IMG/VR virus record: IMGVR_UViG_3300045135_002615
Location: 232,643-296,642 of that record
DNA: 64,000 nt
Strand: one strand, 5' to 3'
A program made the translations under genes and the position numbers. The notes beneath the pieces are model-generated. The model was not told the DNA's origin and did no database searches. It saw only the letters and a list, made by a program, of their open reading frames with translations. Below, one piece after another: positions 634-54,819 of this stretch. Each line of letters starts with the position of its first letter. The stretch's first letter is position 1.

Positions 634-705
634 GGTCCCATCGTCTAGTGGTCAGGACATCGGCCTTTCACGCCGAGAACACGGGTTCAAATCCCGTTGG
701 GATCA
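634..705 (+). tRNA. tRNA-Glu(TTC), no encoded CCA
   Basis: Cloverleaf: GGTCCCA/TGGGATC acceptor, TCGGC-CT-TTC-AC-GCCGA anticodon arm, GGTTCAAATCC T-arm. Confidence 0.95.
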
Positions 706-6552: not shown

Positions 6553-6603
6553 TAGTCTTTTTATAGGTACTCTCTCCTATCAATCCACGATAGGAGAATA
6601 CCT

Positions 6604-8214: not shown

Positions 8215-8785
8215 GCCCAAACTCCCTTCGAGATACAGGCAGGTAGTCAAAGCCAGGTGACACGCTCTCCCCATCGGAGATCTTCTTGCCCTCTTGATCT
8301 ACCTTCATGTTAAAGGTCGCCTTTTCAGCACATGGGCTGAATGTGGCGACCTCTTCTATATTGTCCGCCCACGCCATGAGGTAGGTACTCCCCTCAAATG
8401 GATTACCCTTAAAGTCTGTGCGTAATCCATAAGCAAACACGGGGACTCCGAGTTCATCCGCAACCCGTGTTAAGTCATACACCTGTAGCTTATTCAAGAA
8501 CTGAGACTCATCTACGAATATGACCTTGAGCTCTCTTCGTGCATGCTCTTCAGACACTATCTCAAACAAAGAGCTGTGCTCTTTAAGGGGGGTGGCCTCA
8601 TGCTTAAAGCCCACCCTTGAAGCCACCTGAGCGACACCATCCCTTTTAGCTGCTATAGATGGTATGAGCATCATGAAAGGGATTGATCTCTCATTACAAG
8701 AGTGAGCCCTCATAAGGAGGTTTGCGGTCTTACCCGCATTGACTGTTGAGTAGATAAAGTTTAACAAGGTGACATCTCTCTCCAT
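8204..8785 (-). CDS. tdk: Thymidine kinase
   Basis: FIYSTVNAGKTANLL, IFVDESQF, AYGLRTDFKGNPFEGS..L..AD; true start may lie a few codons downstream. Confidence 0.9.
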   Translation of the reverse strand: MERDVTLLNFIYSTVNAGKTANLLMRAHSCNERSIPFMMLIPSIAAKRDGVAQVASRVGFKHEATPLKEHSSLFEIVSEEHARRELKVIFVDESQFLNKLQVYDLTRVADELGVPVFAYGLRTDFKGNPFEGSTYLMAWADNIEEVATFSPCAEKATFNMKVDQEGKKISDGESVSPGFDYLPVSRREFGLSP

Positions 8786-9387
8786 CCAAAATAGGATGAT
8801 ACTTTGTGGCGAACCTCTTGCACGAGGTTTTTTACTTTTTTACTATCCCACCCATATGTCCTAGCAATGTGTGAAGACTTCATCCCACCCATCATCGCGT
8901 CATACACTTTAAGGGCATCATCGGTGAAGCGACTTCTTACCTCTTCCATGATCATGTCATCCGAGGGGTCTTGGTCATAAGACAAGTCCATAGAGTGTGA
9001 GTGAGAGCTTGAGATGTCCTCCTCAACACCCAACATGGCTTTAGAGCTGTCTTTACGGTGTTTATTGATGACGTTCATTACGATGCAGTTCATCACCATG
9101 ACCACATAGGTTGAGAAAGCTGACTTCTCAGGGTCATAGGGACAAGAACCCTCATTACGGATCATAATCCCTTTGTAGACTTCTTGTAGGACATCTTCCG
9201 GATCAAGTCCTTCCTTAGATACGGAGTGGGCTTGTCTCTTATAGAAGATAAGGCGAACGTCTTGACTTCTTGTATCAAGGTCAATCCCTAGTTTGCGGGG
9301 TTTGACTTGATCAAAACTGAAGGATGCGATAGGAGTGATCCCGATTTGCCATTGACGTGTGGCTTCAATCCCTGAATAACTCGACAT
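8761..9387 (-). CDS. RNA polymerase sigma factor (sigma70 family, ECF/SigH-like size)
   Basis: Region 2-like DPEDVLQEVY..YDPEKSAFSTYV; C-terminal region 4-like HTH GMKSSHIARTYGWDSKKV. Confidence 0.8.
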   Translation of the reverse strand: MSSYSGIEATRQWQIGITPIASFSFDQVKPRKLGIDLDTRSQDVRLIFYKRQAHSVSKEGLDPEDVLQEVYKGIMIRNEGSCPYDPEKSAFSTYVVMVMNCIVMNVINKHRKDSSKAMLGVEEDISSSHSHSMDLSYDQDPSDDMIMEEVRSRFTDDALKVYDAMMGGMKSSHIARTYGWDSKKVKNLVQEVRHKVSSYFGWREMSPC

Positions 9388-12921: not shown

Positions 12922-13340
12922 TGATCTACAGGAGAGACGGCTTGATCTTCATGTCCATTAAGGACACCTATACGGGCTATTTGAAAGTAGCTAAGATACT
13001 CCCCACTGAGACCTCTTGGGGTGTCTTTGAACCCGCTATAGATGTGATTGAACCTTTGATACCTGAAGCCTCCCCAGAGGCACTGGATCGACTTTTACGA
13101 GGAGACCCGACCCCTTTTAGGAATACAAAGGGGTTGAGAGAGCCTCAAGGGTGTCTCAAGCTAATAGACACTGATCGCTATTGTGATGAGCAAGACACCT
13201 GTCTCTCTTACAACAAAACCTATTGCACTTTAGGACATCGTAAGATGCCTGATTGCTTCTCACCTGTTGCAGGTGATCAAATCCGCCCTCTTATCCTTGC
13301 TTGGAAAGAGGGTTTTTTCATTGTCAGGGAAAGGACATGA
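12921..13340 (+). CDS. Hypothetical protein with Cys cluster
   Basis: Five Cys in the C-terminal half. Confidence 0.65.
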   Translation: MIYRRDGLIFMSIKDTYTGYLKVAKILPTETSWGVFEPAIDVIEPLIPEASPEALDRLLRGDPTPFRNTKGLREPQGCLKLIDTDRYCDEQDTCLSYNKTYCTLGHRKMPDCFSPVAGDQIRPLILAWKEGFFIVRERT

Positions 13341-13996
13341 ACATGTTTAAGAGTGCTTCAAAGACCCCTCGTACCATGCGTAGAATTTATGAGGAGGTAG
13401 ACTCTCCTATGGGTGGTCCAGCTAATGAGAATGCGGACTACTTTGGTGAGATCACTGTCAGTGATAACCACATCTACCTCTATCGAGGGATCACACCTAA
13501 GTCTGTTATGGAGATGGGGATTGCCATCAAAACCATTAGTCAACAGATCGTCAACATGGTGACTGACCTTGACCTACCTTCAGCTCCACCTATCCATCTC
13601 CATATCAACTCAGGAGGTGGGTGTGCTTTCAGTGGACTTGCGGGTGCAAGTCATATTTTAGGTTCAGACATCCCTGTGTTCACTTATGTTGAGGGTTCTG
13701 CTGCATCAGCGGCGACCATTATGTCTTGTGTTGGAGCAAAGCGTTTCATCACCGAGCATAGCTTTATGTTGATCCATCAGATCAGCACTGGTGTGTGGGG
13801 TACATATGAGAACCTGAAGGACGAGAAGGAGTCTATGGATGCACTCATGGCTCAACTTGAGGGGATCTACTTGAAGAACACGAAACTCAAGAAGAAGGAC
13901 CTGAAAGAGCTGTTGAAGCGTGACCTATGGCTCAATGCAGATCAATGTTTAGAGAAGGGTCTGGTAGACGAGGTCATCAAGTACGAGAGGGTTTAA
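13337..13996 (+). CDS. clpP: ClpP-family serine protease
   Basis: IHLHINSGGG, GSAASAA (Ser), FMLIHQ (His), RDLWLNADQCLEKGLVDEVI. Confidence 0.9.
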   Translation: MNMFKSASKTPRTMRRIYEEVDSPMGGPANENADYFGEITVSDNHIYLYRGITPKSVMEMGIAIKTISQQIVNMVTDLDLPSAPPIHLHINSGGGCAFSGLAGASHILGSDIPVFTYVEGSAASAATIMSCVGAKRFITEHSFMLIHQISTGVWGTYENLKDEKESMDALMAQLEGIYLKNTKLKKKDLKELLKRDLWLNADQCLEKGLVDEVIKYERV

Positions 13997-14535
13997 AGAG
14001 GACACGCCTCATGTGAGGGGTCTTTCTCACCTGCGTAATAGACGGTGACCACATTAACCATAGACCCTTCAACTTCAAATACCACAATCAAGTCACCGAG
14101 TGCTTCTGCTCTCCACTTGAGTCTTTGTCCCATAAAGATACGCTCTTTGATCTGCTCGATGACCCTTGATCTCTTGTTGTAGTTCTGTCGAAGGTATCTA
14201 CCAAACAGGTTGAAGTAAGTCTTTAGGTCACCTATAGTCACACCTCTCTGATCCATACGGAACTGAGCGTGTGTGGTGATCTTCATCCTCTTGAATGTCT
14301 TATCCCCAACTCGTTCAAACTCTAGGTCATAGATATTATGAGTGTACGAGTCAGGGATGGCTTGTCCTTCTTGAACGATTCTCACAAGTTGCCTCTTTAG
14401 TTTAGGGTTTCGGATATTATCCTCGATCCTCCTCTTAGTGTGGCATACTCCGCCTGGGTATCCGAGTGGAGGGTTCAAGTCCGAGATACGCTCAAGTCGA
14501 GCGACCCTCATGATTAGTCGGTCTATCTTGTTCAT
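13993..14535 (-). CDS. DUF4258/RelE-like (BECR-fold) nuclease-like protein with N-terminal extension
   Basis: ITTHAQFRMDQRGVT..LIVVFE..VNVVTVYY. Confidence 0.6.
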   Translation of the reverse strand: MNKIDRLIMRVARLERISDLNPPLGYPGGVCHTKRRIEDNIRNPKLKRQLVRIVQEGQAIPDSYTHNIYDLEFERVGDKTFKRMKITTHAQFRMDQRGVTIGDLKTYFNLFGRYLRQNYNKRSRVIEQIKERIFMGQRLKWRAEALGDLIVVFEVEGSMVNVVTVYYAGEKDPSHEACPL

Positions 14536-14539
14536 TTTT

Positions 14540-14583
14540 TAGCTCCTTTATGTACTTAATGTGATGAATTCATAAAGGAGCTA
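14540..14583. promoter_or_regulatory. Symmetric bidirectional control element (13-bp inverted repeat)
   Basis: TAGCTCCTTTATG-N18-CATAAAGGAGCTA between divergent start codons. Confidence 0.75.
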
Positions 14584-14587
14584 TGAC

Positions 14588-16288
14588 ATGGACCCTATCG
14601 ACCGACTAATCTCAAGCCTCAACAAGAAGGTTATCCGTAAACTCGCCGCTGAAGACCTCCCTACCTTTGAGGAAGCGATCAAGGGAAAGACCTTCAAGAA
14701 CCCTAATACGGGTAATGACGTTCAGTTTGGATCACTCCCTGCCGAAGAGCAGAAGAAGATCCGTGCTGAATATGACAAGAAGGTGGAGGAGCTTGAAGGA
14801 GAGGGTAAGGGTAAGGGAGAGAAGAAGCCTCTCAAAAAGATGACCAAGGTTCAATTGCTTGATCAGCTTGAAGGGGATAAGGACTTCTCAGGGGTTGATC
14901 TCACTAAGTTTAAAGACTTTGATTGGTCAAGTGTGGATTTGAGGGGTGCTAACTTCTCAGGTTCAGACCTGACAGGTGCGTACTTTGGTGTTGGTTCTAG
15001 ACTCGAAGGAGCGAACTTTGAGGGTGCTAATCTTTCAGGTGTCGAGTTCAGAGGGAAAAAGGGTTATGGCGTGAGCCCGTACAGCGATACTCCAGATACT
15101 GTCCATAAAAACGTCAACTTCAAGGGTGCTAATCTTGAAGGTGCGGAGATGTCTTTTCTTCGTTTTGAAAATTCAGATTTAAGCGGTGCTAATCTAAAGG
15201 GTGCTGAGCTTGACGCGGTGATGATAGATAGAAAATGCACCGTAAGAGGTGCTGACTTTGAGGGTGCAACCTTTCATGCCTCCCAATTCAATGGCGTCAA
15301 TCTGAAGGGTGTGAACTTTGCGGGAGCAACCATAAAGTCTGGGGGTGGATATAATAACAGTAGAAGAACCTTCGACAGAGCGAACATCTCAGGTGCAGAC
15401 TTCTCAGGTGCAAACTTCGCCTTCGGTGACGCTTTTAGGTTTGGTGGTAACTTTGGGAAACCCGCCAAAATAAATGGAGCTAAGTTTAGATTTGATGTTC
15501 TAGAAAGTGTGGGAACTAAAGAATTTAAAGCATTTGGCTTTGATAAAGACAATCCTCCTGAAGGCTTGTCCGATAAGGTTCTACATAAAATGGTTGGTGG
15601 TAGGGAGTACCTAGAGTATAGGGAGGCTGAAGAAGATAAAGCTGAAGAAGCTAAAGCTAAGGCTGATGCGGAAGCCAAAGCTAAAGCTGATGAGGAAGCC
15701 AAAGCCAAAGCTAAAGCTGATGAGGAAGCCAAAGCCAAAGCTAAGGCTGATGAGGAAGCTAAAGCTAAGGCTGATGCTGAAGCCAAAGCTAAGGCTGATG
15801 CTGAAGCCAAAGCTAAGGCTAAAGCTGAAGCCAAAGCTAAGGCTGATGCTGAAGCCAAGGCTAAGGCTGATGAGGAAGCCAAAGCTAAAGCTAAGGCTGA
15901 TGAGGAAGCCAAAGCCAAGGCTAAGGCTGATGAGGAAGCCAAAGCTAAAGCTGAGGAAGAAGAGAAGATCAAAGAGAACTCAAAACGTCTTAAAGACCTT
16001 GAGTCTAAGATTAAAGCCGTTAAGAAGAAAGATGATCTCATTGACCTTGTGTCTGAGCTAGGTAGGATGAAGGGTCAACTCTCAAACGCTAAGTTTAAGG
16101 ACAAACTAGAGTCTGAGATGAAGGCTGTCGATAAAGCTGTACAAAACGCGAAAGAGAACACGTCTTTCACGGGTAGGATTAAGAGCTTCTTCGGTCTAGG
16201 TAAAAAGGCAAGGCTCAAGGAAGCCCGACTCTTGCTCAATGGACTTCAGGATGAGATCGAGCATCTCAAGAGGGACATCAACCGCTGA
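14588..16288 (+). CDS. Pentapeptide-repeat protein with Lys/Ala/Glu helical repeat
   Basis: Many A[ND][FL]xG pentapeptides; AKAKADEE/AKAKADAE tandem repeats. Confidence 0.85.
   Translation: MDPIDRLISSLNKKVIRKLAAEDLPTFEEAIKGKTFKNPNTGNDVQFGSLPAEEQKKIRAEYDKKVEELEGEGKGKGEKKPLKKMTKVQLLDQLEGDKDFSGVDLTKFKDFDWSSVDLRGANFSGSDLTGAYFGVGSRLEGANFEGANLSGVEFRGKKGYGVSPYSDTPDTVHKNVNFKGANLEGAEMSFLRFENSDLSGANLKGAELDAVMIDRKCTVRGADFEGATFHASQFNGVNLKGVNFAGATIKSGGGYNNSRRTFDRANISGADFSGANFAFGDAFRFGGNFGKPAKINGAKFRFDVLESVGTKEFKAFGFDKDNPPEGLSDKVLHKMVGGREYLEYREAEEDKAEEAKAKADAEAKAKADEEAKAKAKADEEAKAKAKADEEAKAKADAEAKAKADAEAKAKAKAEAKAKADAEAKAKADEEAKAKAKADEEAKAKAKADEEAKAKAEEEEKIKENSKRLKDLESKIKAVKKKDDLIDLVSELGRMKGQLSNAKFKDKLESEMKAVDKAVQNAKENTSFTGRIKSFFGLGKKARLKEARLLLNGLQDEIEHLKRDINR
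15641..15960 (+). repeat. Coding tandem repeat, 24/30-bp units
   Basis: gaagccaaagctaaggctgat(gag/gct) units encoding EAKAKAD[EA]. Confidence 0.9.
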
Positions 16289-16354: not shown

Positions 16355-19300
16355 ATGGCAGACGTTATTAGCAAGAATTATGAGGTCGTTACCACATTCG
16401 GTATCTATACCTTTACCGTCACCTCAGATGAGAATGGCTATACCTCTGTAGGTAATATCCGTAGGAACGGCTCCGTATGGACAAGCGACTATCCCGCAGA
16501 AGTCCATGCCGCCATCCAAGATGCTATCCTAGAGGTAGAGTCCCTTAACGGCTCAAACCCTCAGAACTACCTCATCGCGGATAACTTCCTATCCGAGATT
16601 GCAGAACTCGGTGCTCAAGCTCAATTCGCAGCCCGCACCAACCTCGGGTTCTCAAATATCTCTATCGGTGATCTCTCCGATGTAGAACTCGGAGGTAACC
16701 TCGAAGAGAATAAGATACTCAAGGTAGTTAATGGTGTCTTTACTCAAGCCGATCTCCCCGCAGGTGTTGGTGGAGGCTTCACGCAAGAAGAGATTGAAGA
16801 CTTCGTAGGGGCTATGCTCACCGATGGTGGTGGGATCACATGGACATACGATGACAATAACTCTCAGATCAGTGGTGCGGTTACAATCTCACACCTGTCT
16901 GTAGGTGGACTCTCAGATGTGTCTCTCAATAATCCTGTAGATGGTCATGTACTCCGCCATAATGGTGCAGGTCAGTTCGTAAACGTACAGCTCTCATATA
17001 ACGATCTCGCAAACCTTCCCACACTAGGAACCGCATCCTCAAAAAATGCAGGTACCGGAGCAGATGAAGTCCTCCTATTGACACAGGCAGGTATTCTCCC
17101 CGCCCTTGATGGTTCAAACTTGACATCTCTACCCGCCATCACAATCGGTAGCCTCTCAGATGTGGATCCTAATGGAGTAGTTAATGGGCAGGTGCTTGTC
17201 TATGATAACGGCTCTTGGGTACCTGGTAACCCTGGTGTCGTCTATTCAGATGAGCAAGCTCAAGATGCCATCAATGACATGCTCAACAATAATGGAGCTG
17301 TCCATAGTGGTATCAACTTCGTCTATGATGACGTAGCTAACTCCATGACAGCCTCCATTGACATCTCCCCCTTCTCTATCGGCACACTAGCTGATGTAGA
17401 CACAGCAGGGGTAGTCAATGGGCAGGTTCTCAAGTATCAGAACGGCTCATGGACACCTTCACAGGATGTCGGGCGTACCGATGAAGAGATACAAGACCTT
17501 GTAGGTGCTATGCTCCTTGATGGTAATGGCATCACATGGACTTATGATGACAATAACGCACAGATCGGTGGCTCTGTTACCATTGATCATCTCTCTGTAG
17601 GTGGTCTCTCTGATGTGACACTTGCCGCACAAGTCAACAAGCAAGTACTCATCTCTAATGGTGTCAACTTTGAGAACAGGCTACTTGACCTATCAGACAT
17701 CTCGGACTCAGGCACACTCGTCACTCTAGCAGGTGCTCAAAACATCATAGGTGATAAGACCTTCTCAAGTGCAGTTACCTTTATTGGTACTGCTGAATAC
17801 GCGACCCCTGCGGGTGCTGTAGCTAATGAGATCGCTTCTGCCGCCTTCGTGATCAACTATGTTGACTCACAGAGTCACGTTGAGGCAGTAGGTGAACTAG
17901 CGGATGTCTCTGTCAACAACCCTCTCATCAATCAAGTCCTTGTATATGACGGGGTCAGTGACTTCGTTAACCGCCTGTTGGCTTCTACAGACTTGAGTGA
18001 TTCCGCTAGTATTGTAAGGGTGACGGACTCTATCAATGCACTTGCCGATGTTGATCTTGGAGGAGCTCTCGTTGAGGGTAAGGTACTTAAGGTAGTTAAT
18101 GGTGTCTTTACTCAAGCTGATGACATCGACACCGACATCTTCTTGACCCAGGAAGCCGTTGAAGACTTCGTAGGTGCTCAGTTTACACATGCTAATCACT
18201 CTACAGGGATCACGTTCACTTATGACGACCCTTCAAGTGAGATCAGAGCGACCCTTGCTACGAGCCTTCAAGACTACACGGCTCTTGTCCCTAATGATGG
18301 GAGCATCATTATTGGTGATGGGCAGCACTTCACCACAGAGAGCGGAGCTGTAGCTAGGGCTTCTCTTGGACTCACTATTGGAACTCATGTCCAAGCCTAC
18401 AACGCCCGCCTCGCTGAGATTAGTGCTCTCAACCCTGACCTCAACAACTTCATCGTGGGTGATGGTGCAGCCTTCTCTTTAAAGACCCCCGCACAGGTCA
18501 TTACAGCCCTTAATCTTGCCAACCTATACCAACCCCTAGAGGCAACCCTTACGGCTCTTTCTGGGGTAGGTACGGCGGCTAATAAGATCATCTACACAAC
18601 AGGGGTTGATCAGTTCGCGGAAACAGACCTTACCGCCTTTGGTAGATCACTCATAGATGACGCAGATGCTCTAACAGCTAGGGCGACTTTGGGTGTCACG
18701 ATTGGTACACATGTACAGGCTTACTCTGCTCAGCTTACTACGTTCTCTAACCTCAACCCCGCAGATGGGAACTTCATCGTAGGTAATGGGGTTTCATTTG
18801 TGGTAGAGAGTGGTGCGACAGCAAGAGCTTCACTAGGTTTGGGTTCAGCGGCACTTAATGATGAAGGTGACTTCTTAGCGAGTGGTTCAGGTCTTGATGA
18901 TCTGTCAAATGTGCAGATCAACGGGTCTGCTAATAGGCAGTTCCTTGTCAATGATGGTACGGGCAACTATGTGAACCGCACGATCAGCTCAACAGACCTC
19001 TCTAACACAGCCAAGATTGTCCTCCTTGATGGTTCTGATGAGCTCGTGCTCACTAACGTAATCAAGCCCAATGGTGGGATCAATGTCAATGGAGGAAACT
19101 TCACAGTAGCCGCTAATGGCGATGTGGTTGTAGGTGGTTCTCTTGATGTCTCTGGTCTAACCGCGACCCAGGCAGGCGTGAGTGTTATCAACACCAATAC
19201 GGGGAATGCCTCTCTTCATATCACGCCTAATGGAGACAACGCCTCTATCAACTCCGCTGGGGGCTCTATTGGGTTCAACCTTGCCACCCTCACAGACATC

Positions 19301-22300
19301 AATAGCATTACCTCCACAGAGGCGAGCTTCTCACTCCTGTCTACTTCTTCAATCACACTCGGTGACAACCTTGCTGTGGCATTGGAGGTCAGAGAGGGTG
19401 CAAATAGCTACATGACCTTCGTCACCACAGATGCAGGTGAGAAGATTGTCATGTCAAAGCCTGTAGAAGTCGCTACTAGCTTGAATGTGGGTAATGTCTC
19501 TATCAACAATGGTGTCATCTCTAATGGTGGTGCAGGGATTGACTTTGATGGTGAGTCACTTGCTACAACTGGCTCTGTCAACATCAATGGTGGGGCATTT
19601 ACAATAGATGGTGCTACGGGTAATGTCTCTACACAAGGCACACTCTCAGTCAACACTACCTCTACATTTACAGGTCTTGCTGACTTCAATGGCGGTGTTG
19701 ATCTAAATGCGGGTACGATTGTTGGTGTCTCTACCCTCACCACGACTACGATTGATGCCACAGGGGATACACTCAACTTAAACCTTAAAGACAACAAGGG
19801 TATTGCTCTTAAGGTTGCTGAAGGTGCCAACTCATACATAGAGGTAGACACCACTGATACTGCTGAAGAGGTTCGTATTTTGAAGCCTCTTGAGATCGAG
19901 GGGACACTTCAGCTCGGTTCAGGTAGCCTTGAGGATACTACGGGTCAGATTGATCTCGGTAGCACAAGTGTAACGACTACGGGTAATCTTACAGTCCAAG
20001 ACTTGACGGTCAATGGTGTTCAGAACATCAACAACCAGAACAACCTTCAAGTCAACGACAGCGTCATTGAGCTTAATGCCAACTTTGTGGGTAATAACGC
20101 TAATGACCTTGGTCTGCTTCTAACACGAGGTGATGAGGATGACGCCCTTATTATTTGGGACGAAGGTCTCTCGTCATTTGTGCTTGCTACTCATAGTGGT
20201 GCTGTCTCTGTAAACACTACGGACTTCTCAGGTGTTGCGGGTCTCACAGAAGCAAACCTAAAGATTGGTGGTCTGACTACAACTGCAAGTGTTACGGTTG
20301 GCACTACACTCTCAGTCACAGGTACAGGCACAATCACGGCACCTGCTCAGATCTCTAATGGTAATGAGATTGTAACTGCCGCATGGGTACGAGGGCTCGG
20401 ACTCAGTGACCTTACGGGCACAACAGAAGCAGTCCAAGACATCTCAGGTGGTCAGTTCACACACGCTAATCACTCTACAGGGATCACGTTCACTTATGAC
20501 GACCCTTCAAGTGAGATCAGAGCGACCCTTGATGCAGGTCTTCAGTCTATTAGCACACTAGGAACTGTGGCGGATCGAATCCTCTACACTACGGGTGCTG
20601 ACACCTATGCAGAGACTGCCATTACCCTTGCGGGTCGTAATCTCATCGCCTCCGCAGACCCTGTAGCTCATCTTGGTCTTGTTATAGGTACTGATGTCCA
20701 AGCCTACAATGCCCGCCTCGCTGAGATCAGCAACATTGCGGTACCCGTTGCTGATAACTTCCTTGCAGGTGATGGCAACGATTTTGTACTCAAGACCCCC
20801 GCACAGGCTCGTACCTCGTTGGGTCTTGATCAAGCTAATGCTAGGGTGACACTTGGTTTCGGCACAGCGGTTACGAATGACACTACGGACTTCTTAGCAA
20901 GTGGATCGGGTCTTAACGATCTCTCTGATGTGGTCATTACTAATGATCTCGTTGCAGGTACACCTCTTGTCAATCAGGTGCTCGTCTACACGAACAATGC
21001 TACGTTTGAGAACGTCCAGCTGACAACAAGTCAGCTCGTTGATGGTTCTTCTCTTATCAAGGACACCGACTCGATCAATCGTTTACATGACGTAGACACT
21101 ACAGGTCATGCCCAAGGTAAGATCCTTGTCTTTAACGCTAATGGTCATCTCGTAGTTGGTGATAAGACCTTGCCCGAGGAGGTTCAAGATACCGTTGGTG
21201 GCATGATCACCGCAGGTAATCAGACGGACATCACGGTCACCTATGACGATGCTAATGACAAGATCGACTTCTCAGTAGACGCTACGATTGCAAGGCTTAA
21301 CAGTCCTGCCTTTACAGGCACACCTACTGCTCCTACTGCCAATCAAGGTGACAACTCGACACAGCTCGCTACCACTAGCTATGTAGACACCGCCGTTCAA
21401 GGTGTGATCATTGGAGGAGGCTTCCAACCCAATAATGATAACCTCACAGACATCAGTGGTCTTACACCTGATGCGGATAACTTCATTGTCGGTGACGGCA
21501 ATAACTTCGTACAAGAGACACCTGCTCAAGTTAGGGCTACTCTCGGACTTGGTACTGCCGCTCAGAATGACACCGGAGACTTCCTTGCAAGTGGATCGGG
21601 TCTTAATGCTCTCTCTGATGTCACTCTAGGGGCTACCGCAAACAAGCAGTTCCTCGTCCATGATGGAGTTAATGGGTTTGCTAATAGAGTAATCTCCACT
21701 TCTGACCTCTCTGATGGGGCAGGGGTTCTCTTCAACACCTCGTCTATCAATGATCTGTCTGATGTTGACACCACAGGTAAGGCTGATGGTAGAGTTCTCA
21801 AGTTCAACGCTCAAGGAGATTTGGTTGTTGGTGACGATCTCGGCAAGACCGAGGAGGAGATACAAGACATTGTAGGCACCATGTTCGTTGCGAACAATGC
21901 AGGTAATACCCATATCACATTTGCCTATGATGACACCGAGGGTGCTAATGACGGCACAATCACCGCTACTGTCTCTCTCAATTCAACTGACCTCGGTGAT
22001 AGTGCTCTCCTTGCACGTCTAGCAAGCCCCGCCTTTACAGGTACTCCTACTGCACCTAAAGCCGATCTTAATGATGACTCAAACAAGATCGCTACCACGA
22101 GCTATGTGCAACAAGAGATACACTTCCTTGCTCAAGATTATCAACCTCTTGATGACCGTCTTACTGAGATCAGCAACATCGCTATCCCTACAGCGGATAA
22201 CTTCCTTGCTGGTGATGGTAACGACCTTGTGCTTAAGACCCCTGCACAGGCTCGTACCTCGTTGGGTCTTGATCAAGTTAATGCTAGGGTCACTCTCGGC

Positions 22301-25300
22301 TTTGGTACTGCTGTCACGAACGACACAGGTGACTTCTTAGCAAGTGGTTCAGGTCTTGATGACCTCTCTGATGTGGTGCTTGGAGCGACAGCTAATAAGC
22401 AGTTCCTTGTCCATGATGGGAACAACTTTGCTAATAGGATTATCTCTACTACTGACTTGAGCGATGGGACTGATATTCCTCTCCTAGATGCACAGGGAGA
22501 CTTGAGCCTAGGCTCAGACCTCTCAGTGACAGGTGTTCTCACCACAGGTAGTCTCGTTACGGACACTTTGACTCTTACAGGTGGAGTCAACCCTGCCTTC
22601 TCTATTGAGGACGGTGCGAGCACTTACCTTCAGATCAACACCCTTGTTGGTTTTGAGAAGGTGTCTGTCACTCAAGACTTTGAGGCAACAGGTGATGTGA
22701 CCCTCTCCTCCATTGAGGTCTCAGGAACTCAAATCACAGCAGGTGGTGCGGGCATCACCTTTGGTGCTGAGAGCCTGACGACCACAGGGACTGTCACGGT
22801 AGGCAACCTCACCGTTAATGGTACGCTCACTACGATCAACACGGATAACCTCTCTGTGAAGGATCGTGTGGTCGAACTCAATAGTGGCATTGGTGCGAAC
22901 AATAACGCAAACGATCTCGGTCTGTTCCTTAACAGAGGTAATGACGCAGACGCTCTCATCTTGTGGGACGAGGGTGAAGATGCCTTTGTCTTTGCTACGC
23001 ACACAGGTGCTGTCGATGGGACAACGGCGGACTACTCCGATGTAGCTCATGGCGGTTCCTTCTCAAGAGCTCCTGTACTCACAGGCAATATGGGTGTCAC
23101 AGGCACTCTCTCAGTAAGCGGGCAAACTACTCTGACAGGGCTTCTCCTTGCTAATGGTGGGGTCAACGTCAATGGTGGGAACTTCATTGTAGATTCAGCC
23201 ACAGGTAATGTCTCAACTATAGGCACTCTTACAGTCACAAGCACAGGTACGATTACCGCACCTGCTCAAGGAGCTAATGCCAATGAGATTGTCACCGCAG
23301 CATGGGTACGAGGCTTGGACATCTTTGACTTCAACGCCACCGCAGAGGAACTTGAAGATGCTGTAGCGGGTCAGTTCACACATGGTAATCATGGTGGTGG
23401 GCTCAGTGTCACTTACATAGACGATGGTGGAGTTAATGATGGTGAGATCCGTATCTCTACTACGGGCAACCTCGCAGACATCGCCACCATCACACACAAT
23501 GCAGGTGACTTCATTGTCGGTGACGGAAACAACTTCACGGCACAAACACCTGCACAAGTAAGAGCTACTCTTGATCTTGAAGTCGGTACGGATGTTCAAG
23601 CGTATGACGCGGGTCTACAATCCATTAGTGGTTTGGTTACAGGTGCAGGTCAGATCATCTACACCACCGCCCCTGATACTTATGCAACCTCTTCCATTAG
23701 TGCATTCGGCAGATCACTCATAGATGATGCTGATGCGGCTACCGCAAGAGCTACTTTGGGACTTGTCATCAACACGGATGTACAAGAGCACCATGAGTTC
23801 CTCACCGAGCTCAGTAACCTTGACCCATTAGGTGCAAACCAAGTCATCTACTCTGATGCTCTTGGTGATCTAGCTACCTCTTCCATTAGTGCTTTCGGTA
23901 GATCACTCATAGACGATGCTGACGCAGGTGTCGCGAGAGCTACTCTTGGTGTTGTGATCGGTACTAACGTACAGGCACAAGATGCAGGGCTACAATCCAT
24001 TAGCGGGTTGGTCACCGCCGCAGATCAGATGATCTATACTACGGCTCTTGACACTTATGCCACTACTTCCCTTACCGCATTTGGTAGATCACTCATAGAC
24101 GATGCTGACGCTCTTACGGCAAGGGCAACTCTCGGAGTGGTCATTGGCACGGATGTACAGGCACAAGACGCAGGTCTACAATCCATTAGTGGGTTAGTGA
24201 CAGGTGCAGATCAGATGATCTACACCACTGCCCTAGACACTTATGCCACCACAAGCCTAACCACCTTTGGTAGATCGCTCCTCGATGATGCTGATGCGAC
24301 TACGGCGAGGGCAACACTTGGCGTGGTGATTGGTACGGATGTACAAGCTCAGAATGGGCTCTTGCAAGAGTTTGCAGACCTAGACCCTGTAGCTGCCAAC
24401 AGGTTGTTCTATACAGACGCAAATGGCAACCTCACTACGTCTGTACTGACAGCTCAAGCGATAGCCCTACTTGATGACTCAACCTCTGCTGCTCAGAGGA
24501 CGACACTTGGTCTTGTGATCGGTACGGATGTGCAGGCTCAAGATGCAGGGTTGGAGTCTATAAGTGGTTTGATCACTGCGGCTGACCAGATGATCTACAC
24601 TACAGGTGCAGATACCTACGCGACTACAAGTCTGACAGCTTTTGGTAGGTCACTCATAGATGATGCCAACGCTCTAACAGCTAGAGCGACTTTGGGCGTC
24701 ACGATTGGTACTGATGTTCAGGCGTATGACCCTGCTCTGCAATCCATTAGTGGTTTGGTGACAGGTGCTAATCAGATCATTTACACGACTGCTCAAGACA
24801 CCTATGCCACGAGTGCGGTTACTGCCTTCGGTCTTAGCTTGATTGATGATGCAGATGCTCTAACAGCAAGGTCTACACTTGGAGTAGTCATAGGCACTGA
24901 TGTGCAAGCATATGACCCTGCACTTCAATCTATTAGTGGTTTGGTTACGGGTGCAGATCAGATGATCTACACTACCGGTGTAGATACCTATGCTACGACC
25001 ACGATCACAGCAGTCGGTAGAGCTTTGCTTGATGACGCTACTGTAGCTGATCAGAGAGCCACTCTTGGTCTTGGTGACGCCGCCCTTGTAAATACTTCGG
25101 TCAATGGTGGTGTGGGTGAGCAAGGTAAGGCTGTTGTGCTTGATGGTACGGGTAAGCTAGGGGCTCTTGACGGGTCTGCTTTGACGGCACTTGGCTCAAT
25201 CAACACCTTGAGTGATGTGGACACAACGGGCTTGGATGCTAATGATGTGCTTACATGGGATGCAGGTCAAGGTAAGTTTGTACCTACGGCACTTCAAGCT

Positions 25301-25774
25301 CAGTCTATAGCGAGCACGGCTCAAGCACTCATTGATGGTAATGGTACGAATACAGGTGCAGACACGATTGACTTCTCTTATGATGCTCAGAACGAGGTCA
25401 TCAATCTAGCACTTGGCATCAGCACATCTAACTTGACGGATGTGAGTGCTGCTCCTGATACGAATAAGCAGGTGTTGAGGTACACGACTGATGGAGGTTT
25501 GAACAAGTATGTCCCTACGGTGCTCGGTACGTCTACTGATTATGATGTGGGTACTGCACCTGGTGAGATCATCTTGCTCAGTGATCCTACACAGGACAAT
25601 GTCAATGCAGTTGCCGACCTTATTGTTCTTGGTCGTGTGATTGAGACGATTGATTATGGTTCAGTTGCGGATGCTTTTGTAGATGGTCAAGACTTCGCAA
25701 CGGATTGGAATGGTACGGGTTTCAATGACACATTGATTTATGCGGCGGAGGACTATGGGGTGTTGGTGAGTTAA
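16355..25774 (+). CDS. Giant repetitive fibre-like virion protein (3139 aa)
   Basis: LxDLSDV, QEEIEDFVGAM, SPAFTGTPTAP and TAFGRSLIDDADA..ARATLG repeat types typical of phage tail fibres; C-terminal DYG motifs. Confidence 0.85.
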   Translation: MADVISKNYEVVTTFGIYTFTVTSDENGYTSVGNIRRNGSVWTSDYPAEVHAAIQDAILEVESLNGSNPQNYLIADNFLSEIAELGAQAQFAARTNLGFSNISIGDLSDVELGGNLEENKILKVVNGVFTQADLPAGVGGGFTQEEIEDFVGAMLTDGGGITWTYDDNNSQISGAVTISHLSVGGLSDVSLNNPVDGHVLRHNGAGQFVNVQLSYNDLANLPTLGTASSKNAGTGADEVLLLTQAGILPALDGSNLTSLPAITIGSLSDVDPNGVVNGQVLVYDNGSWVPGNPGVVYSDEQAQDAINDMLNNNGAVHSGINFVYDDVANSMTASIDISPFSIGTLADVDTAGVVNGQVLKYQNGSWTPSQDVGRTDEEIQDLVGAMLLDGNGITWTYDDNNAQIGGSVTIDHLSVGGLSDVTLAAQVNKQVLISNGVNFENRLLDLSDISDSGTLVTLAGAQNIIGDKTFSSAVTFIGTAEYATPAGAVANEIASAAFVINYVDSQSHVEAVGELADVSVNNPLINQVLVYDGVSDFVNRLLASTDLSDSASIVRVTDSINALADVDLGGALVEGKVLKVVNGVFTQADDIDTDIFLTQEAVEDFVGAQFTHANHSTGITFTYDDPSSEIRATLATSLQDYTALVPNDGSIIIGDGQHFTTESGAVARASLGLTIGTHVQAYNARLAEISALNPDLNNFIVGDGAAFSLKTPAQVITALNLANLYQPLEATLTALSGVGTAANKIIYTTGVDQFAETDLTAFGRSLIDDADALTARATLGVTIGTHVQAYSAQLTTFSNLNPADGNFIVGNGVSFVVESGATARASLGLGSAALNDEGDFLASGSGLDDLSNVQINGSANRQFLVNDGTGNYVNRTISSTDLSNTAKIVLLDGSDELVLTNVIKPNGGINVNGGNFTVAANGDVVVGGSLDVSGLTATQAGVSVINTNTGNASLHITPNGDNASINSAGGSIGFNLATLTDINSITSTEASFSLLSTSSITLGDNLAVALEVREGANSYMTFVTTDAGEKIVMSKPVEVATSLNVGNVSINNGVISNGGAGIDFDGESLATTGSVNINGGAFTIDGATGNVSTQGTLSVNTTSTFTGLADFNGGVDLNAGTIVGVSTLTTTTIDATGDTLNLNLKDNKGIALKVAEGANSYIEVDTTDTAEEVRILKPLEIEGTLQLGSGSLEDTTGQIDLGSTSVTTTGNLTVQDLTVNGVQNINNQNNLQVNDSVIELNANFVGNNANDLGLLLTRGDEDDALIIWDEGLSSFVLATHSGAVSVNTTDFSGVAGLTEANLKIGGLTTTASVTVGTTLSVTGTGTITAPAQISNGNEIVTAAWVRGLGLSDLTGTTEAVQDISGGQFTHANHSTGITFTYDDPSSEIRATLDAGLQSISTLGTVADRILYTTGADTYAETAITLAGRNLIASADPVAHLGLVIGTDVQAYNARLAEISNIAVPVADNFLAGDGNDFVLKTPAQARTSLGLDQANARVTLGFGTAVTNDTTDFLASGSGLNDLSDVVITNDLVAGTPLVNQVLVYTNNATFENVQLTTSQLVDGSSLIKDTDSINRLHDVDTTGHAQGKILVFNANGHLVVGDKTLPEEVQDTVGGMITAGNQTDITVTYDDANDKIDFSVDATIARLNSPAFTGTPTAPTANQGDNSTQLATTSYVDTAVQGVIIGGGFQPNNDNLTDISGLTPDADNFIVGDGNNFVQETPAQVRATLGLGTAAQNDTGDFLASGSGLNALSDVTLGATANKQFLVHDGVNGFANRVISTSDLSDGAGVLFNTSSINDLSDVDTTGKADGRVLKFNAQGDLVVGDDLGKTEEEIQDIVGTMFVANNAGNTHITFAYDDTEGANDGTITATVSLNSTDLGDSALLARLASPAFTGTPTAPKADLNDDSNKIATTSYVQQEIHFLAQDYQPLDDRLTEISNIAIPTADNFLAGDGNDLVLKTPAQARTSLGLDQVNARVTLGFGTAVTNDTGDFLASGSGLDDLSDVVLGATANKQFLVHDGNNFANRIISTTDLSDGTDIPLLDAQGDLSLGSDLSVTGVLTTGSLVTDTLTLTGGVNPAFSIEDGASTYLQINTLVGFEKVSVTQDFEATGDVTLSSIEVSGTQITAGGAGITFGAESLTTTGTVTVGNLTVNGTLTTINTDNLSVKDRVVELNSGIGANNNANDLGLFLNRGNDADALILWDEGEDAFVFATHTGAVDGTTADYSDVAHGGSFSRAPVLTGNMGVTGTLSVSGQTTLTGLLLANGGVNVNGGNFIVDSATGNVSTIGTLTVTSTGTITAPAQGANANEIVTAAWVRGLDIFDFNATAEELEDAVAGQFTHGNHGGGLSVTYIDDGGVNDGEIRISTTGNLADIATITHNAGDFIVGDGNNFTAQTPAQVRATLDLEVGTDVQAYDAGLQSISGLVTGAGQIIYTTAPDTYATSSISAFGRSLIDDADAATARATLGLVINTDVQEHHEFLTELSNLDPLGANQVIYSDALGDLATSSISAFGRSLIDDADAGVARATLGVVIGTNVQAQDAGLQSISGLVTAADQMIYTTALDTYATTSLTAFGRSLIDDADALTARATLGVVIGTDVQAQDAGLQSISGLVTGADQMIYTTALDTYATTSLTTFGRSLLDDADATTARATLGVVIGTDVQAQNGLLQEFADLDPVAANRLFYTDANGNLTTSVLTAQAIALLDDSTSAAQRTTLGLVIGTDVQAQDAGLESISGLITAADQMIYTTGADTYATTSLTAFGRSLIDDANALTARATLGVTIGTDVQAYDPALQSISGLVTGANQIIYTTAQDTYATSAVTAFGLSLIDDADALTARSTLGVVIGTDVQAYDPALQSISGLVTGADQMIYTTGVDTYATTTITAVGRALLDDATVADQRATLGLGDAALVNTSVNGGVGEQGKAVVLDGTGKLGALDGSALTALGSINTLSDVDTTGLDANDVLTWDAGQGKFVPTALQAQSIASTAQALIDGNGTNTGADTIDFSYDAQNEVINLALGISTSNLTDVSAAPDTNKQVLRYTTDGGLNKYVPTVLGTSTDYDVGTAPGEIILLSDPTQDNVNAVADLIVLGRVIETIDYGSVADAFVDGQDFATDWNGTGFNDTLIYAAEDYGVLVS
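23576..25069 (+). repeat. Eight tandem 62/63-codon repeats inside the first giant gene
   Basis: Units VxIGTDVQA..ARATLG; 6x186 bp plus 2x189 bp. Confidence 0.9.
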
Positions 25775-25830
25775 TAGTGCTTTTATCAAGACGCTTCATA
25801 ACAACAGAAGCGTCTTGATAGGAGTAGCCT

Positions 25831-37750: not shown

Positions 37751-37799
37751 TAGACTTTTAATGGGAGAACTCCTTATGTGCCTACAGAGGAGTTGTGCC

Positions 37800-39574: not shown

Positions 39575-39626
39575 AGTTTTAGATCGTTAATAGAGCCCCT
39601 TCTCAGACAACACAACAGGAGGGGTT

Positions 39627-40914: not shown

Positions 40915-41295
40915 ATGAGAAGAACAGCTAGTGAGATGATTAACGACCTTGAGATCAGGGTAGCCCGACTTGAGTCAAAGAAGGCTTTTTTTGGACTCTT
41001 CAGGAAGAGAGACGTAGTAGACGAACTGGTTGAGCAGATACTTAAGACTCAAGGAGTGGAGATCAATAAGATTAAGAGAAAGGAAATCAGTAGAGACTCT
41101 ACTTTGGTGAAGGGTAGGCTTGTCAATGGCGTAGAGTTCGAGATTTATCATGTTTTCCACCCTGTAGACTATGATATGGGTAGGTTTGAAGTTAAGTTCG
41201 ATGGTCGCATGGTCTATAGAGACGTATATAAGAATGGGCTTGGTAATTTCCTAGATCATAATGACATCGAGAAGGATATAAAGCCTTTTAAATAA
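40915..41295 (+). CDS. Hypothetical protein with RRTAS..RVARLE leader
   Basis: MRRTASEMINDLEIRVARLESKKAFFGLFRKR; GGAG SD. Confidence 0.7.
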   Translation: MRRTASEMINDLEIRVARLESKKAFFGLFRKRDVVDELVEQILKTQGVEINKIKRKEISRDSTLVKGRLVNGVEFEIYHVFHPVDYDMGRFEVKFDGRMVYRDVYKNGLGNFLDHNDIEKDIKPFK

Positions 41296-54662: not shown

Positions 54663-54742
54663 ATCAACCCTATACGAGCCTGCATCCTAACCGAGTATGA
54701 CAAGCGGAAGACCATGCAGGGAACTTCCTTAGAGTTGAGTAG

Positions 54743-54815: not shown

Positions 54816-54819
54816 TTAG

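What the first reader, a model, noticed from the sequence alone, without database searches (positions are those of the whole stretch)
14533..14590. 52-bp symmetric intergenic element in which each arm is SD for one gene and promoter motif for the other
Seen: TAGCTCCTTTATG and CATAAAGGAGCTA are perfect inverted arms. Read one way an arm is TAG-CTCC-TT-TAT (the late motif, 36 nt from the far start codon in both directions); read the other way it is the AAAGGAG SD of the near gene. A read-through RNA on either strand would pair the arms and hide the SD. Inference: a very compact bidirectional switch that keeps a RelE-like nuclease and a pentapeptide protein untranslated until late transcription starts.
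Basis: partly seen in the sequence, partly recalled or inferred. Interest (0 to 1): 0.62.

Follow-up and report, generated by a model that had tools for sequence, protein, structure and literature searches.

The report
Double-coded divergent promoter and ribosome-site palindrome

Summary
TAGCTCCTTTATG (14540-14552) and CATAAAGGAGCTA (14571-14583) are perfect inverted arms. Each gives AAAGGAG 7 nt before the near ATG. Each read the other way ends 36 nt before the far ATG.

The "late motif" is real. TAG-N4-TT[TA]AT has 50 genome hits, and 35 lie 20-60 nt upstream of a co-oriented start, against about 1 expected. Downstream genes include tail-fibre and virion genes. Homologues of both genes in related phages carry the motif. 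Only 5 of 328 ribosome-site antisenses match it, all at divergent junctions. One other junction is palindromic in the same way.

Most likely these are two crossing, overlapping promoter and ribosome-site modules. The palindrome would then be a by-product of double coding.

RNA spanning both arms folds stably (-18 kcal/mol for the 13-bp stem, -45 for the 100-nt hairpin) and buries the ribosome site. RNAs starting after the motif are unstructured. This parallels T4 genes e, soc, 49 and I-TevI. It is untested, and only the plus-strand gene has a plausible read-through source.

The palindrome also extends in frame to 41-nt arms. The gene pair is a 2.17-kb indel among roughly 90%-identical relatives. 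"RelE-like" is only weakly supported. I rate this a new variant of a known kind.

The parts
14540..14551 (+). Left arm, read on + as TAGCTCCTTTAT. It is a motif instance (TAG-N4-TTTAT) for the plus gene and ends 36 nt before ATG 14588.
   Evidence: Full model score 17.5 and core score 15.6, rank 23 of 71 accepted sites. Regex hit.
14543..14549 (-). Shine-Dalgarno AAAGGAG of the minus gene (reverse complement of CTCCTTT). GGAG lies 7 nt from ATG 14535.
   Evidence: The genome-wide ribosome-site signal lies at -13 to -7.
14572..14583 (-). Right arm, read on - as TAGCTCCTTTAT. It is a motif instance for the minus gene and ends 36 nt before its ATG at 14535.
   Evidence: Full model score 19.4. Regex hit.
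14574..14580 (+). Shine-Dalgarno AAAGGAG of the plus gene. GGAG lies 7 nt from ATG 14588.
   Evidence: The start at 14588 is confirmed by homologues that begin at the same ATG.
14553..14570 (.). 18-nt spacer or loop between the arms. Inferred transcription starts flank it, at G14552 (+) and at the G opposite C14571 (-). On that inference the two mRNAs would overlap by about 20 nt at their 5' ends.
   Evidence: Inference from motif geometry: T/A at motif positions 1-2, T-depletion right after TTTAT, and hairpins elsewhere that begin 0-8 nt after the motif. Not mapped.
14512..14611 (.). Extended imperfect palindrome: 41-nt arms, 33/41 complementary, covering the ribosome site, ATG and codons 1-8 of both genes.
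   Evidence: RNA folds of -45.3 (+) and -44.9 (-) kcal/mol, z -9.1 and -8.5. The hairpin is retained in a 300-nt context.
13993..14535 (-). Minus gene, 180 aa. It has an N-terminal 'RVARLE' leader helix and a C-terminal domain with a RelE/ParE-superfamily-like fold (weak DUF4258 match).
   Evidence: Homologues: L003, P0002, L019-L022.
14588..16288 (+). Plus gene, 566 aa. It has a conserved N-terminal 75 aa, pentapeptide repeats, a KAKADEEA low-complexity coil, and a conserved C-terminal end.
   Evidence: PF00805, 94 bits. Homologues P0003 and P0004 share only the ends.
14021..16190 (.). 2,170-bp segment that holds almost all of both genes and the palindrome. It is absent from contigs of roughly 90%-identical relatives.
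   Evidence: Joint 14020->16191 in one contig each of runs X2 and X3, with 2-nt microhomology (junction sequences).

Best explanation
The 52-bp gap holds two complete, overlapping expression modules that cross each other.

Each 12-nt arm TAGCTCCTTTAT is an instance of this phage clade's conserved TAG-N4-TTTAT element. I take that element to be a phage-specific promoter for structural or late-class genes. On that reading T/A sit at -12/-11 and transcription starts on the base right after TTTAT, at about 14552 on + and 14571 on -. The reverse complement of the same arm supplies AAAGGAG 7 nt before the neighbouring gene's ATG.

The double coding costs little. GGAG falls in the motif's variable N4 block. 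The motif's fixed bases (TAG, TTTAT) fall where a ribosome site has no constraint. So once the gap is 52 bp, both arms are driven to the same 12-mer, and the palindrome follows as a by-product.

Shown from sequence: the anatomy, the motif statistics, conservation of the motif upstream of homologues, and the RNA thermodynamics. Inferred: that the motif is a promoter, where transcription starts, and the timing.

One consequence is that any RNA entering from outside, which realistically means plus-strand read-through from the protease operon, pairs the arms and hides the plus gene's ribosome site. Motif-initiated RNAs have open leaders. I treat that gating as a possible side benefit, not as the reason the palindrome exists.
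For: - Motif reality. The regex TAG....TT[TA]AT gives 50 hits, and 35 lie 20-60 nt upstream of a co-oriented start. Such windows cover about 2.3% of strand positions, so about 1 hit is expected. The weight-matrix model gives 76 sites 25-50 nt upstream of starts, 28 of them at divergent junctions where a promoter is required.
- The arms score 19.4 and 17.5, which is mid-rank.
- Genes downstream of the motif include tail-fibre giants and virion proteins.
- Homologues of both genes in other phages all carry the motif 40-47 nt upstream despite different neighbours: L003, L017 and L018, L021 and L022.
- Only 5 of 328 ribosome-site antisenses match the motif core. All 5 are at divergent junctions. 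They include a second palindromic pair at L008:16526-16539 / 16565-16578.
- Back-to-back motif pairs sit in the middle of other divergent gaps, for example genome 1032/1038. In 4 cases the motif follows an intrinsic terminator.
- Leaders starting at 14552 and 14571 are unstructured: -7.1 and -4.6 kcal/mol, z +0.9 and +0.6.
Against: - There is no transcript evidence of any kind and no cultured relative.
- No phage RNA polymerase was found by Pfam. The only candidate factor is a weak Sigma70_r2 hit, 19 bits against a cut-off of 24.
- The motif is statistically tied to ribosome-site-burying hairpins placed right after it: 21/66 motif-bearing against 7/110 other 5' regions fold at -12 kcal/mol or better, p = 2e-5. 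Its spacing to the ATG is also tight. Both features would fit an RNA-level element as well.
- The plus gene's close homologue in L017 has its ribosome site locked in a -31.5 kcal/mol hairpin even in a motif-initiated leader. The open leader seen here is therefore not conserved.
- A 375-kb relative has TATCTCCTTTAT as a ribosome-site antisense at a non-divergent junction, so such matches can arise without function.
- The gene models and starts come from my own simple ORF caller. The weight-matrix model was refined on sites chosen by position.
Confidence: 0.58

Rival explanations
1. The hairpin itself is the selected feature. Upstream-initiated early or middle RNA pairs the arms and blocks translation. 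Only RNA started at the motif inside the 5' arm is translated. This is the mechanism of T4 genes e, soc, 49 and I-TevI, here in a form that serves both directions.
For: - The stem is 13 bp at -18 kcal/mol and extends to -45 kcal/mol.
- The ribosome site has an unpaired probability of 0.00 in read-through constructs, against 0.49 (+) and 0.75 (-) in motif-initiated ones.
- The structure survives in a 300-nt context.
- No terminator lies on + between the protease gene end (13996) and 14588, so read-through into the plus gene is plausible.
- The palindrome extends beyond what double coding requires. Our plus gene has GAC CGA where the close homologue has AAC AGA, and those two differences match the opposite arm.
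Against: - The minus gene has no visible read-through source. Upstream on its strand lie about 20 kb of plus-strand genes.
- Any divergent pair with strong ribosome sites carries a CUCC...GGAG complement, and the 12-mer identity follows from double coding alone.
- The upstream operon includes the head protease, itself likely late, so a temporal contrast is not evident.
- Elsewhere in the genome the anti-ribosome-site arm lies 5-13 nt downstream of the motif. Those hairpins persist in motif-initiated RNA and therefore do not work as read-through switches.
Confidence: 0.25
2. The motif acts in RNA rather than as a promoter. It could be an operator for a translational activator, as in the Mu Com/mom system, or a processing site next to the ribosome-site hairpin. 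In this element the motif is itself the anti-ribosome-site arm, so a factor bound to it would directly free the ribosome site.
For: - The motif-to-ATG distance is tight: 25-50 nt, median about 38.
- The motif abuts hairpins that bury the ribosome site, and this association is significant.
- It often overlaps the upstream stop codon in 41-56-nt gaps, where a separate promoter for every gene is not obviously needed.
- L017 and this locus implement ribosome-site burial differently but keep the motif next to or inside the stem.
Against: - 28 sites are at divergent junctions. Several of those gaps (42-59 bp) leave no room for another promoter.
- Back-to-back motif pairs centred in divergent gaps fit promoters better.
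- Four sites directly follow intrinsic terminators.
- There is no strand-specific avoidance inside genes, though the counts are too small to decide.
Confidence: 0.13
3. The palindrome is a relic of an inverted duplication or gene conversion of one gene's 5' end. It has no regulatory meaning beyond giving both genes a ribosome site.
For: The arms match at 33/41 in frame, including 12/12 identity that uses the rare codons CGA (9%) and CTA (13%). This ranks in the top 19 of 53,956 gene pairs.
Against: - Each N-terminus is ancestral to its own family. P0003/L017 begins MDSINRLIS with a different upstream region.
- P0002 begins MQSKLNRLMLRVARLE.
- Metagenome contigs match from exactly ATG 14588 onward and differ upstream of it.
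- Duplication therefore cannot have created either gene start. At most, local conversion added 2-3 matches.
Confidence: 0.03
4. The palindrome is a DNA operator for a dimeric repressor, as in toxin-antitoxin autoregulation, or a bidirectional terminator.
For: It is a perfect inverted repeat between divergent genes, one of which has a toxin-like fold.
Against: - The half-sites are 31 bp apart centre to centre.
- No antitoxin or helix-turn-helix gene lies in the 2.17-kb cassette.
- There is no GC-rich stem with a U-tract, and the terminator scan found none.
- Terminators are not expected between divergent starts.
Confidence: 0.01

Closest known systems
T4 translational gating of genes e (lysozyme), soc, 49 and I-TevI: a late promoter inside the DNA that encodes the 5' strand of a hairpin burying the ribosome-binding site (review PMC3014915)
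   Same: The ribosome site pairs with an upstream complementary arm in longer transcripts. A phage late-type promoter element coincides with that arm, so promoter-initiated RNA lacks it and has an open leader.
   Different: - The motif is TAG-N4-TTTAT, not TATAAATA.
- The anti-ribosome-site arm is at the same time the neighbour's own ribosome site.
- The design is symmetric for two divergent genes.
- Nothing has been tested experimentally, and only one direction has a plausible read-through source.
phiKZ late promoters, T(-3)ATG(+1), overlapping the transcription start (PMC7598289)
   Same: Both are short phage-specific elements that end in TAT followed by a purine, with no -35 element and a likely start right after the motif. 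Both arms here read TTTATG.
   Different: No phiKZ-type multisubunit RNA polymerase was detected by Pfam. The motif here is longer and far more informative, and it can be found by sequence analysis alone, unlike phiKZ late promoters.
Overlapping divergent promoters in compact bacterial and phage intergenic regions (general knowledge)
   Same: Two divergent genes share one short gap, with promoter elements interleaved with the partner's leader.
   Different: Here the promoter-like element and the partner's Shine-Dalgarno site are the same 12 bp on both sides, which makes a perfect palindrome. I know of no described case with that exact double use; this rests on my own knowledge, not on an exhaustive search.
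Mu Com/mom translational activation (own knowledge)
   Same: A conserved single-stranded RNA site lies immediately 5' of a hairpin that occludes the translation start. This resembles the genome-wide motif-plus-hairpin modules seen here.
   Different: No Com-like protein was identified. The divergent-junction data favour a DNA-level promoter.
PeSL 'promoter-early stem-loop' mobile regulatory cassettes of T4-type phages (own knowledge, Arbiol et al. 2010)
   Same: Short promoter-plus-stem-loop modules travel with individual accessory genes and flank variable regions. Here the motif, with or without the hairpin, accompanies homologues in different contexts, and the gene pair is an indel.
   Different: The order is motif then stem-loop, not stem-loop then promoter. 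The observed deletion joint lies inside the two genes, not at motif copies.

Membership tests
Clade-specific TAG-N4-TTTAT motif regulon (putative late/structural promoter) | Sequence match to the motif model | tested here: met
   The arms have full scores of 17.5 and 19.4. The core score of 15.6 ranks 23 of 71.
Clade-specific TAG-N4-TTTAT motif regulon (putative late/structural promoter) | Co-oriented with a start codon and 25-50 nt upstream of it | tested here: met
   36 nt on both strands. The genome range is 25-50 nt with a median of about 38.
Clade-specific TAG-N4-TTTAT motif regulon (putative late/structural promoter) | Homologous genes in related phages carry the motif | tested here: met
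   L003, L017, L018, L021 and L022.
Clade-specific TAG-N4-TTTAT motif regulon (putative late/structural promoter) | Transcription initiates at or next to the motif | not testable with these tools
   No RNA runs hold this phage and no cultured relative exists.
T4-type late-promoter-in-hairpin translational gating | The ribosome site or AUG is sequestered in a helix in upstream-initiated RNA | tested here: met
   In silico only. Stems of -18.4 and -18.0 kcal/mol, and -45 kcal/mol when extended. Ribosome-site unpaired probability 0.00. The structure persists in 300 nt.
T4-type late-promoter-in-hairpin translational gating | A late promoter lies in the DNA encoding the 5' strand, so late RNA lacks that strand | tested here: inconclusive
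   The motif coincides with the 5' arm, and leaders from 14552 and 14571 are unstructured. The start sites are inferred, not mapped.
T4-type late-promoter-in-hairpin translational gating | Earlier read-through transcripts enter the gene | tested here: inconclusive
   No terminator lies on + between 13996 and 14588. On the minus strand no upstream same-strand gene occurs for about 20 kb. There are no RNA data.
Shine-Dalgarno translation initiation region | A GGAG-type core 5-10 nt upstream of the start codon | tested here: met
   AAAGGAG with 7-nt spacing on both sides. The genome-wide signal lies at -13 to -7.
Intrinsic (bidirectional) terminator | A GC-rich stem followed by a U-tract | tested here: not met
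   The scan found none in 13900-15000. The stem is AT-rich and has no 3' T-run on either strand.
Known RNA families (Rfam 15) | A match above the gathering score | tested here: not met
   Only sub-threshold microRNA-precursor hits, which reflect a generic long hairpin: 26.7 bits against a threshold of 74.
RelE/ParE-superfamily toxin (DUF4258) for the minus gene | Family profile match above the cut-off | tested here: not met
   PF14076 scores 20.1 bits against a cut-off of 25, E = 8e-4.
RelE/ParE-superfamily toxin (DUF4258) for the minus gene | RelE/ParE fold | tested here: inconclusive
   The AlphaFold2 model has pLDDT 74.7. Nearly all top matches are RelE/ParE/HigB/YoeB/YafQ/BrnT over residues 78-172, but they are weak: Foldseek E 0.1-1 and Z 4.3-5.7.
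RelE/ParE-superfamily toxin (DUF4258) for the minus gene | A cognate antitoxin gene adjacent | tested here: not met
   The only neighbour within the cassette is the 566-aa pentapeptide-repeat gene. No small antitoxin-like ORF is evident.
Pentapeptide-repeat protein (plus gene) | Pfam PF00805 above the cut-off | tested here: met
   94.3 bits against a cut-off of 20.2, plus PF13599 and PF13576.

The most novel reading that the evidence does not exclude
The palindrome is a selected two-way gate. One 13-bp (extendable to 41-nt-arm) helix silences translation of whichever gene is reached by foreign or read-through RNA on either strand, and each gene is translated only from its own motif-started transcript. 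More broadly, TAG-N4-TTTAT plus an anti-ribosome-site/ribosome-site helix would be a coupled transcription-translation control module used on dozens of late genes in an uncharacterised clade of marine jumbo phages.
Probability: 0.2. Interest if true: 0.75.

Novelty: new variant of a known kind. Interest (0 to 1): 0.5.

Why it matters
If the reading holds, it shows how far regulatory information can be compressed. The same 12 bp would serve as a promoter on one strand and a ribosome-binding site on the other, twice within 52 bp.

It also exposes a previously undescribed promoter-like motif, with about 70 sites per genome and conservation across several uncultivated marine jumbo phages. That motif is usually coupled to a 5' hairpin that buries the ribosome site. 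This gives a concrete, testable handle on late gene control in a phage group that has no cultured member.

It would also extend the T4 rule of translating only from the late transcript to a distant lineage and to a bidirectional layout.

If the palindrome is only a by-product of double coding, the result is still useful. It is a caution against reading regulatory hairpins into every divergent pair of strong ribosome sites.

Tried and rejected
- DNA similarity to GenBank phages found only low-complexity hits in the KAKADEEA repeat region. A tblastn search with the protease found only distant ClpP-type matches and no cultured relative.
- An exact-palindrome scan of IMG/VR gave 0 hits. By my rough estimate that is near chance expectation for a collection of this size, so it was not interpretable.
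- No public RNA run holds the locus. Read laying returned DNA contigs only.
- The sigma-70 promoter and terminator scan found nothing in the gap. Rfam found nothing above threshold.
- Pfam searches of the genome for multisubunit and T7-type RNA polymerases found nothing. The T7-type control rang nowhere, so that blank is uninformative.
- PHROG annotation of motif-driven and large genes returned mostly no family.
- I tested whether the motif is avoided on the sense or antisense strand inside genes. Observed counts were 5 and 2 against 3.9 and 5.9 expected, which is inconclusive.
- I tested whether motifs follow terminators. Only 4 of 71 do, which is supportive but weak.
- A PDB sequence-profile search for the minus protein gave no meaningful hit.
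- An inverted-duplication origin was considered and rejected, because relatives keep each N-terminus with different upstream DNA.
- A word search for relatives of the minus protein found only itself and one 24%-identical protein.
- The large representative-protein search and the complex predictor were not used, because no claim here rests on them.
Full report
**Setting.** The window is the last 64 kb of a 296,642-bp IMG/VR virus record rated 95% complete, at G000:C1:232643-296642. The best DNA holder is a seawater metagenome. No cultured relative was found.

The finding lies between two genes.
- The minus-strand gene, 13993-14535 (180 aa), converges on a ClpP-type head-maturation protease gene (13301-13996, +).
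- The plus-strand gene, 14588-16288 (566 aa), is followed by two tail-fibre-like genes of about 3,100 aa.

**The observation.** reads CAT-TTTT-TAGCTCCTTTATG-(18 nt)-CATAAAGGAGCTA-TGAC-ATG.
- The arms (14540-14552 and 14571-14583) are 13/13 complementary.
- GGAG is 7 nt from each near ATG.
- The 12-mer read the other way ends 36 nt from each far ATG.

The palindrome is larger than reported. The arms 14512-14552 and 14571-14611 match at 33 of 41 positions without gaps and in frame, through ATG and codons 2-8 (MNKIDRLI and MDPIDRLI; GACCGACTAATC is identical). That in-register identity uses the rare codons CGA (9%) and CTA (13%). It ranks in the top 19 of 53,956 gene pairs, and nearly all the other top pairs are evident paralogues.

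As RNA, the 13-bp stem is worth -18.4 (+) and -18.0 (-) kcal/mol. The 100-nt hairpin is worth -45.3 and -44.9 kcal/mol, with z of -9.1 and -8.5. It survives in a 300-nt context.

**The "late motif" is real.**
- The regex TAG....TT[TA]AT has 50 hits in the genome. Of these, 35 lie 20-60 nt upstream of a co-oriented start codon. Those windows cover about 2.3% of strand positions, so about one hit is expected.
- A weight matrix (consensus t-n-A-TAG-T-Y-Y-n-TTTAT) finds 76 such sites, 25-50 nt from the ATG with a median of about 38. Of these, 48 follow a co-directional gene and 28 sit at divergent junctions.
- The two arms score 19.4 and 17.5, which is mid-rank. Only 32 12-mers on both strands score as well as TAGCTCCTTTAT on the core.
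- Genes behind the motif in the window include both tail-fibre giants and virion-structural proteins. DNA-metabolism genes in the window (thymidine kinase, Toprim, RecD-like helicase) are not among the window's motif sites. "Late/structural" is therefore a fair label, but it is an inference.
- The motif is conserved across a clade. Homologues of the minus gene (L003, L021, L022) and of the plus gene (L017, L018) sit in unrelated neighbourhoods, yet each has the motif 40-47 nt upstream.

**Is it a promoter?** There are no transcript data.

Points in favour:
- Twenty-eight sites are at divergent junctions. Several of those gaps are only 42-59 bp and leave no room for another promoter.
- Some divergent gaps have back-to-back motif pairs in the middle.
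- Four sites follow intrinsic terminators.
- The geometry is sigma-like if transcription starts on the base after TTTAT: near-invariant T/A at -12/-11 and T-depletion at +1. phiKZ late promoters likewise overlap the start as T(-3)ATG(+1) (PMC7598289), and both arms here read TTTATG.

Points against:
- No phage RNA polymerase was detected by Pfam. The only candidate factor is a sub-threshold Sigma70_r2 hit, in the ORF at 8761-9387.
- The motif is tied to RNA structure (next section).

I put the promoter reading at about 0.7.

**The usual module, and how this locus differs.** In many sites the motif is followed at once by a strong hairpin whose 3' arm contains the ribosome site. Examples are window 6553 (-18.0 kcal/mol), window 37751 (-17.2), genome 204908 (-25.0) and genome 134620 (-26.7).
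- Motif-bearing 5' regions reach -12 kcal/mol or better in 21 of 66 cases, against 7 of 110 for other genes (Fisher p = 2e-5).
- In those hairpins the anti-ribosome-site arm lies 5-13 nt downstream of the motif. They would therefore persist in motif-initiated RNA.
- The plus gene's close homologue in L017 is of this type, with a 17-bp hairpin of -31.5 kcal/mol.

At the locus under study the leaders after the motif are unstructured: -7.1 and -4.6 kcal/mol, no better than shuffles. The anti-ribosome-site arm is the motif itself. The ribosome site is fully paired in read-through constructs (unpaired probability 0.00). It is open in motif-initiated ones (0.49 for +, 0.75 for -).

**Why the palindrome exists.**
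- With a 52-bp gap, 36-nt leaders and 7-nt ribosome-site spacing, each motif must overlie the partner's ribosome site.
- GGAG falls in the motif's variable N4 block.
- The motif's fixed TAG and TTTAT fall on positions where a ribosome site has no constraint.
- The two requirements together specify TAG-CTCC-TTTAT on both arms. Twelve of the 13 paired bases therefore need no further explanation.

The same solution recurs. Only 5 of 328 ribosome-site antisenses match the motif core at a score of 10 or more, and all 5 are at divergent junctions. They are the two arms here, both arms of a 59-bp gap (L008:16526-16539 / 16565-16578, 14 nt, 93% complementary), and one at genome 204900. A further half-case at genome 155342-155353 uses the identical 12-mer.

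One caution applies. A 375-kb relative has TATCTCCTTTAT as a ribosome-site antisense at a non-divergent junction, so such matches can occur without function.

**Origin of the extension into the coding sequences.** This is not an inverted duplication.
- P0003 (L017) begins MDSINRLIS, with ATC AAC AGA CTA ATC and a different upstream region.
- Metagenome contigs match from exactly ATG 14588 onward and differ upstream of it.
- P0002 begins MQSKLNRLMLRVARLE.

Both N-termini are therefore ancestral and merely similar. Our plus gene differs from L017 at two bases (GAC CGA against AAC AGA), and both match the opposite arm. That is compatible with local conversion or with selection for pairing. I cannot tell which.

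**The switch hypothesis.** The architecture is that of T4 genes e, soc, 49 and I-TevI. [quoted passage not shown]
- For the plus gene, read-through is plausible. The minus gene overlaps the protease gene's 3' end, and no terminator lies on the plus strand before 14588.
- For the minus gene, no same-strand gene lies upstream for about 20 kb.
- The upstream operon includes a morphogenetic protease, so a temporal contrast is not evident.

I rate a selected, functional gate at about 0.25 and a by-product at about 0.58.

**The genes.**
- The plus protein is a solid pentapeptide-repeat protein (PF00805, 94 bits).
- The minus protein has a sub-threshold DUF4258 hit (20.1 bits against a cut-off of 25) and an invariant H-x-QFRMD-x-RG-x-T motif across six homologues.
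- Its model (pLDDT 74.7) has residues 78-172 matching almost only RelE/ParE/HigB/YoeB/YafQ/BrnT toxins, but weakly: Foldseek E 0.1-1 and Z 4.3-5.7.
- No antitoxin-like neighbour is evident. The fair description is a RelE/ParE-like fold with unproven activity.

**The pair is dispensable.** In two other metagenomes, contigs roughly 90% identical in the flanks join 14020 directly to 16191, with 2-nt microhomology. This removes 2,170 bp, which is nearly all of both genes and the palindrome.

**Caveats.**
- The gene models outside the listed ORFs come from my own simple caller, which prefers starts that have a Shine-Dalgarno site.
- The weight matrix was refined on position-selected sites. The regex statistic is independent of that refinement.
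- IMG's own gene call starts the minus gene at Met9 (172 aa). I prefer ATG 14535 for two reasons: its ribosome site is canonical, and P0002 aligns to residues 3-8.

**Verdict.** The double-use reading is well supported by sequence statistics and comparative data. The regulatory-switch reading is plausible but unproven, and probably relevant to one direction at most. This is a new variant of a known kind.

Noticed in passing
window 6553-6603, 25775-25830, 37751-37799, 39580-39626, 57390-57437; genome-wide via L005-L016: The TAG-N4-TTTAT motif is usually followed within 0-8 nt by a strong hairpin (-14 to -27 kcal/mol) whose 3' arm holds the Shine-Dalgarno site. Motif-bearing 5' regions reach -12 kcal/mol or better in 21/66 cases against 7/110 for other genes (p = 2e-5). 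It is unexplained why about a third of presumed late mRNAs would start with a stem that buries the ribosome site.
   Followed up: partly
L008:16526-16578 (genome 76526-76578); L012:15342-15353 (genome 155342-155353): A second double-coded palindrome (TGTACTCCTTCTAT / ATAAAAGGAGTACA) sits in a 59-bp divergent gap. A half-case elsewhere uses the identical 12-mer TAGCTCCTTTAT both as the motif for the minus gene and as the ribosome site for the plus gene.
   Followed up: partly
window 14021-16190: The whole divergent gene pair is a 2,170-bp indel. Contigs of roughly 90%-identical phages from two other metagenomes join 14020 to 16191 with 2-nt microhomology.
   Followed up: partly
window 14588-16288; P0003 (L017:5001-7382), P0004 (L018:5001-7400): The plus protein belongs to a family with a conserved N-terminal region of about 75 aa and a conserved C-terminal end (..KSFFGLGKKA..), but an entirely swapped middle: pentapeptide repeats here, acidic coiled-coil in the roughly 800-aa homologues. 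One metagenome contig has 825 unrelated bases between the conserved ends.
   Followed up: partly
window 40915-41295 and 13993-14535; genome 81282-81662, 148676-150665, 196104-196670, 203044-203460, 220300-221243 and others: At least a dozen otherwise unrelated proteins share an N-terminal leader such as MRHLTASQKIAQLE-x-RIARLE-K/R. Relatives have it too, for example MRRSASEIIRELEGRIARLERQ in L003. It might be a virion-targeting or protease-cleaved propeptide, but I did not test that.
   Followed up: no
window 8761-9387 (-): A 208-aa ORF has a sub-threshold Sigma70_r2 match (19 bits, cut-off 24). It is a candidate phage sigma-like factor for the motif. A relative (L017:9322-9894) has a faint Sigma70_r4 hit.
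   Followed up: partly
window 16355-25774 and 25831-35172: Two adjacent giant genes (3,139 and 3,113 aa) are each preceded by the motif. The first has multiple tail-fibre PHROG matches and internally repeated segments.
   Followed up: partly
window 41790 (TATAAATA); genome 4048, 109272, 183700, 220256, 1044: The T4-late-like octamer TATAAATA lies 34-80 nt upstream of several starts, often just after G/C-tract hairpins. TTATATGAA is confined to intergenic DNA (7 of 7 occurrences). These may be further promoter classes.
   Followed up: no
window 13993-14535 (-): The database gene call for the minus gene is 172 aa, starting at Met9. The upstream ATG at 14535 has the canonical ribosome site and matches homologues' N-termini, so the start is probably mis-called in the source annotation.
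   Followed up: yes
window 634-705, 1074-1146, 54557-54631, 54742-54892: Five tRNA genes (Glu-TTC, Lys-TTT, Met-CAT, Arg-CCT, Arg-TCT) lie in two clusters.
   Followed up: no
genome 133255-134568 (L011:13255-14568, -) and 190873-192492 (L014:10873-12492, +): Two further proteins hit the same PHROG families as the pentapeptide-repeat plus gene (for example phrog_923, phrog_15350, phrog_7713). Both are also motif-driven, so the plus gene may have paralogues in the same regulon.
   Followed up: no
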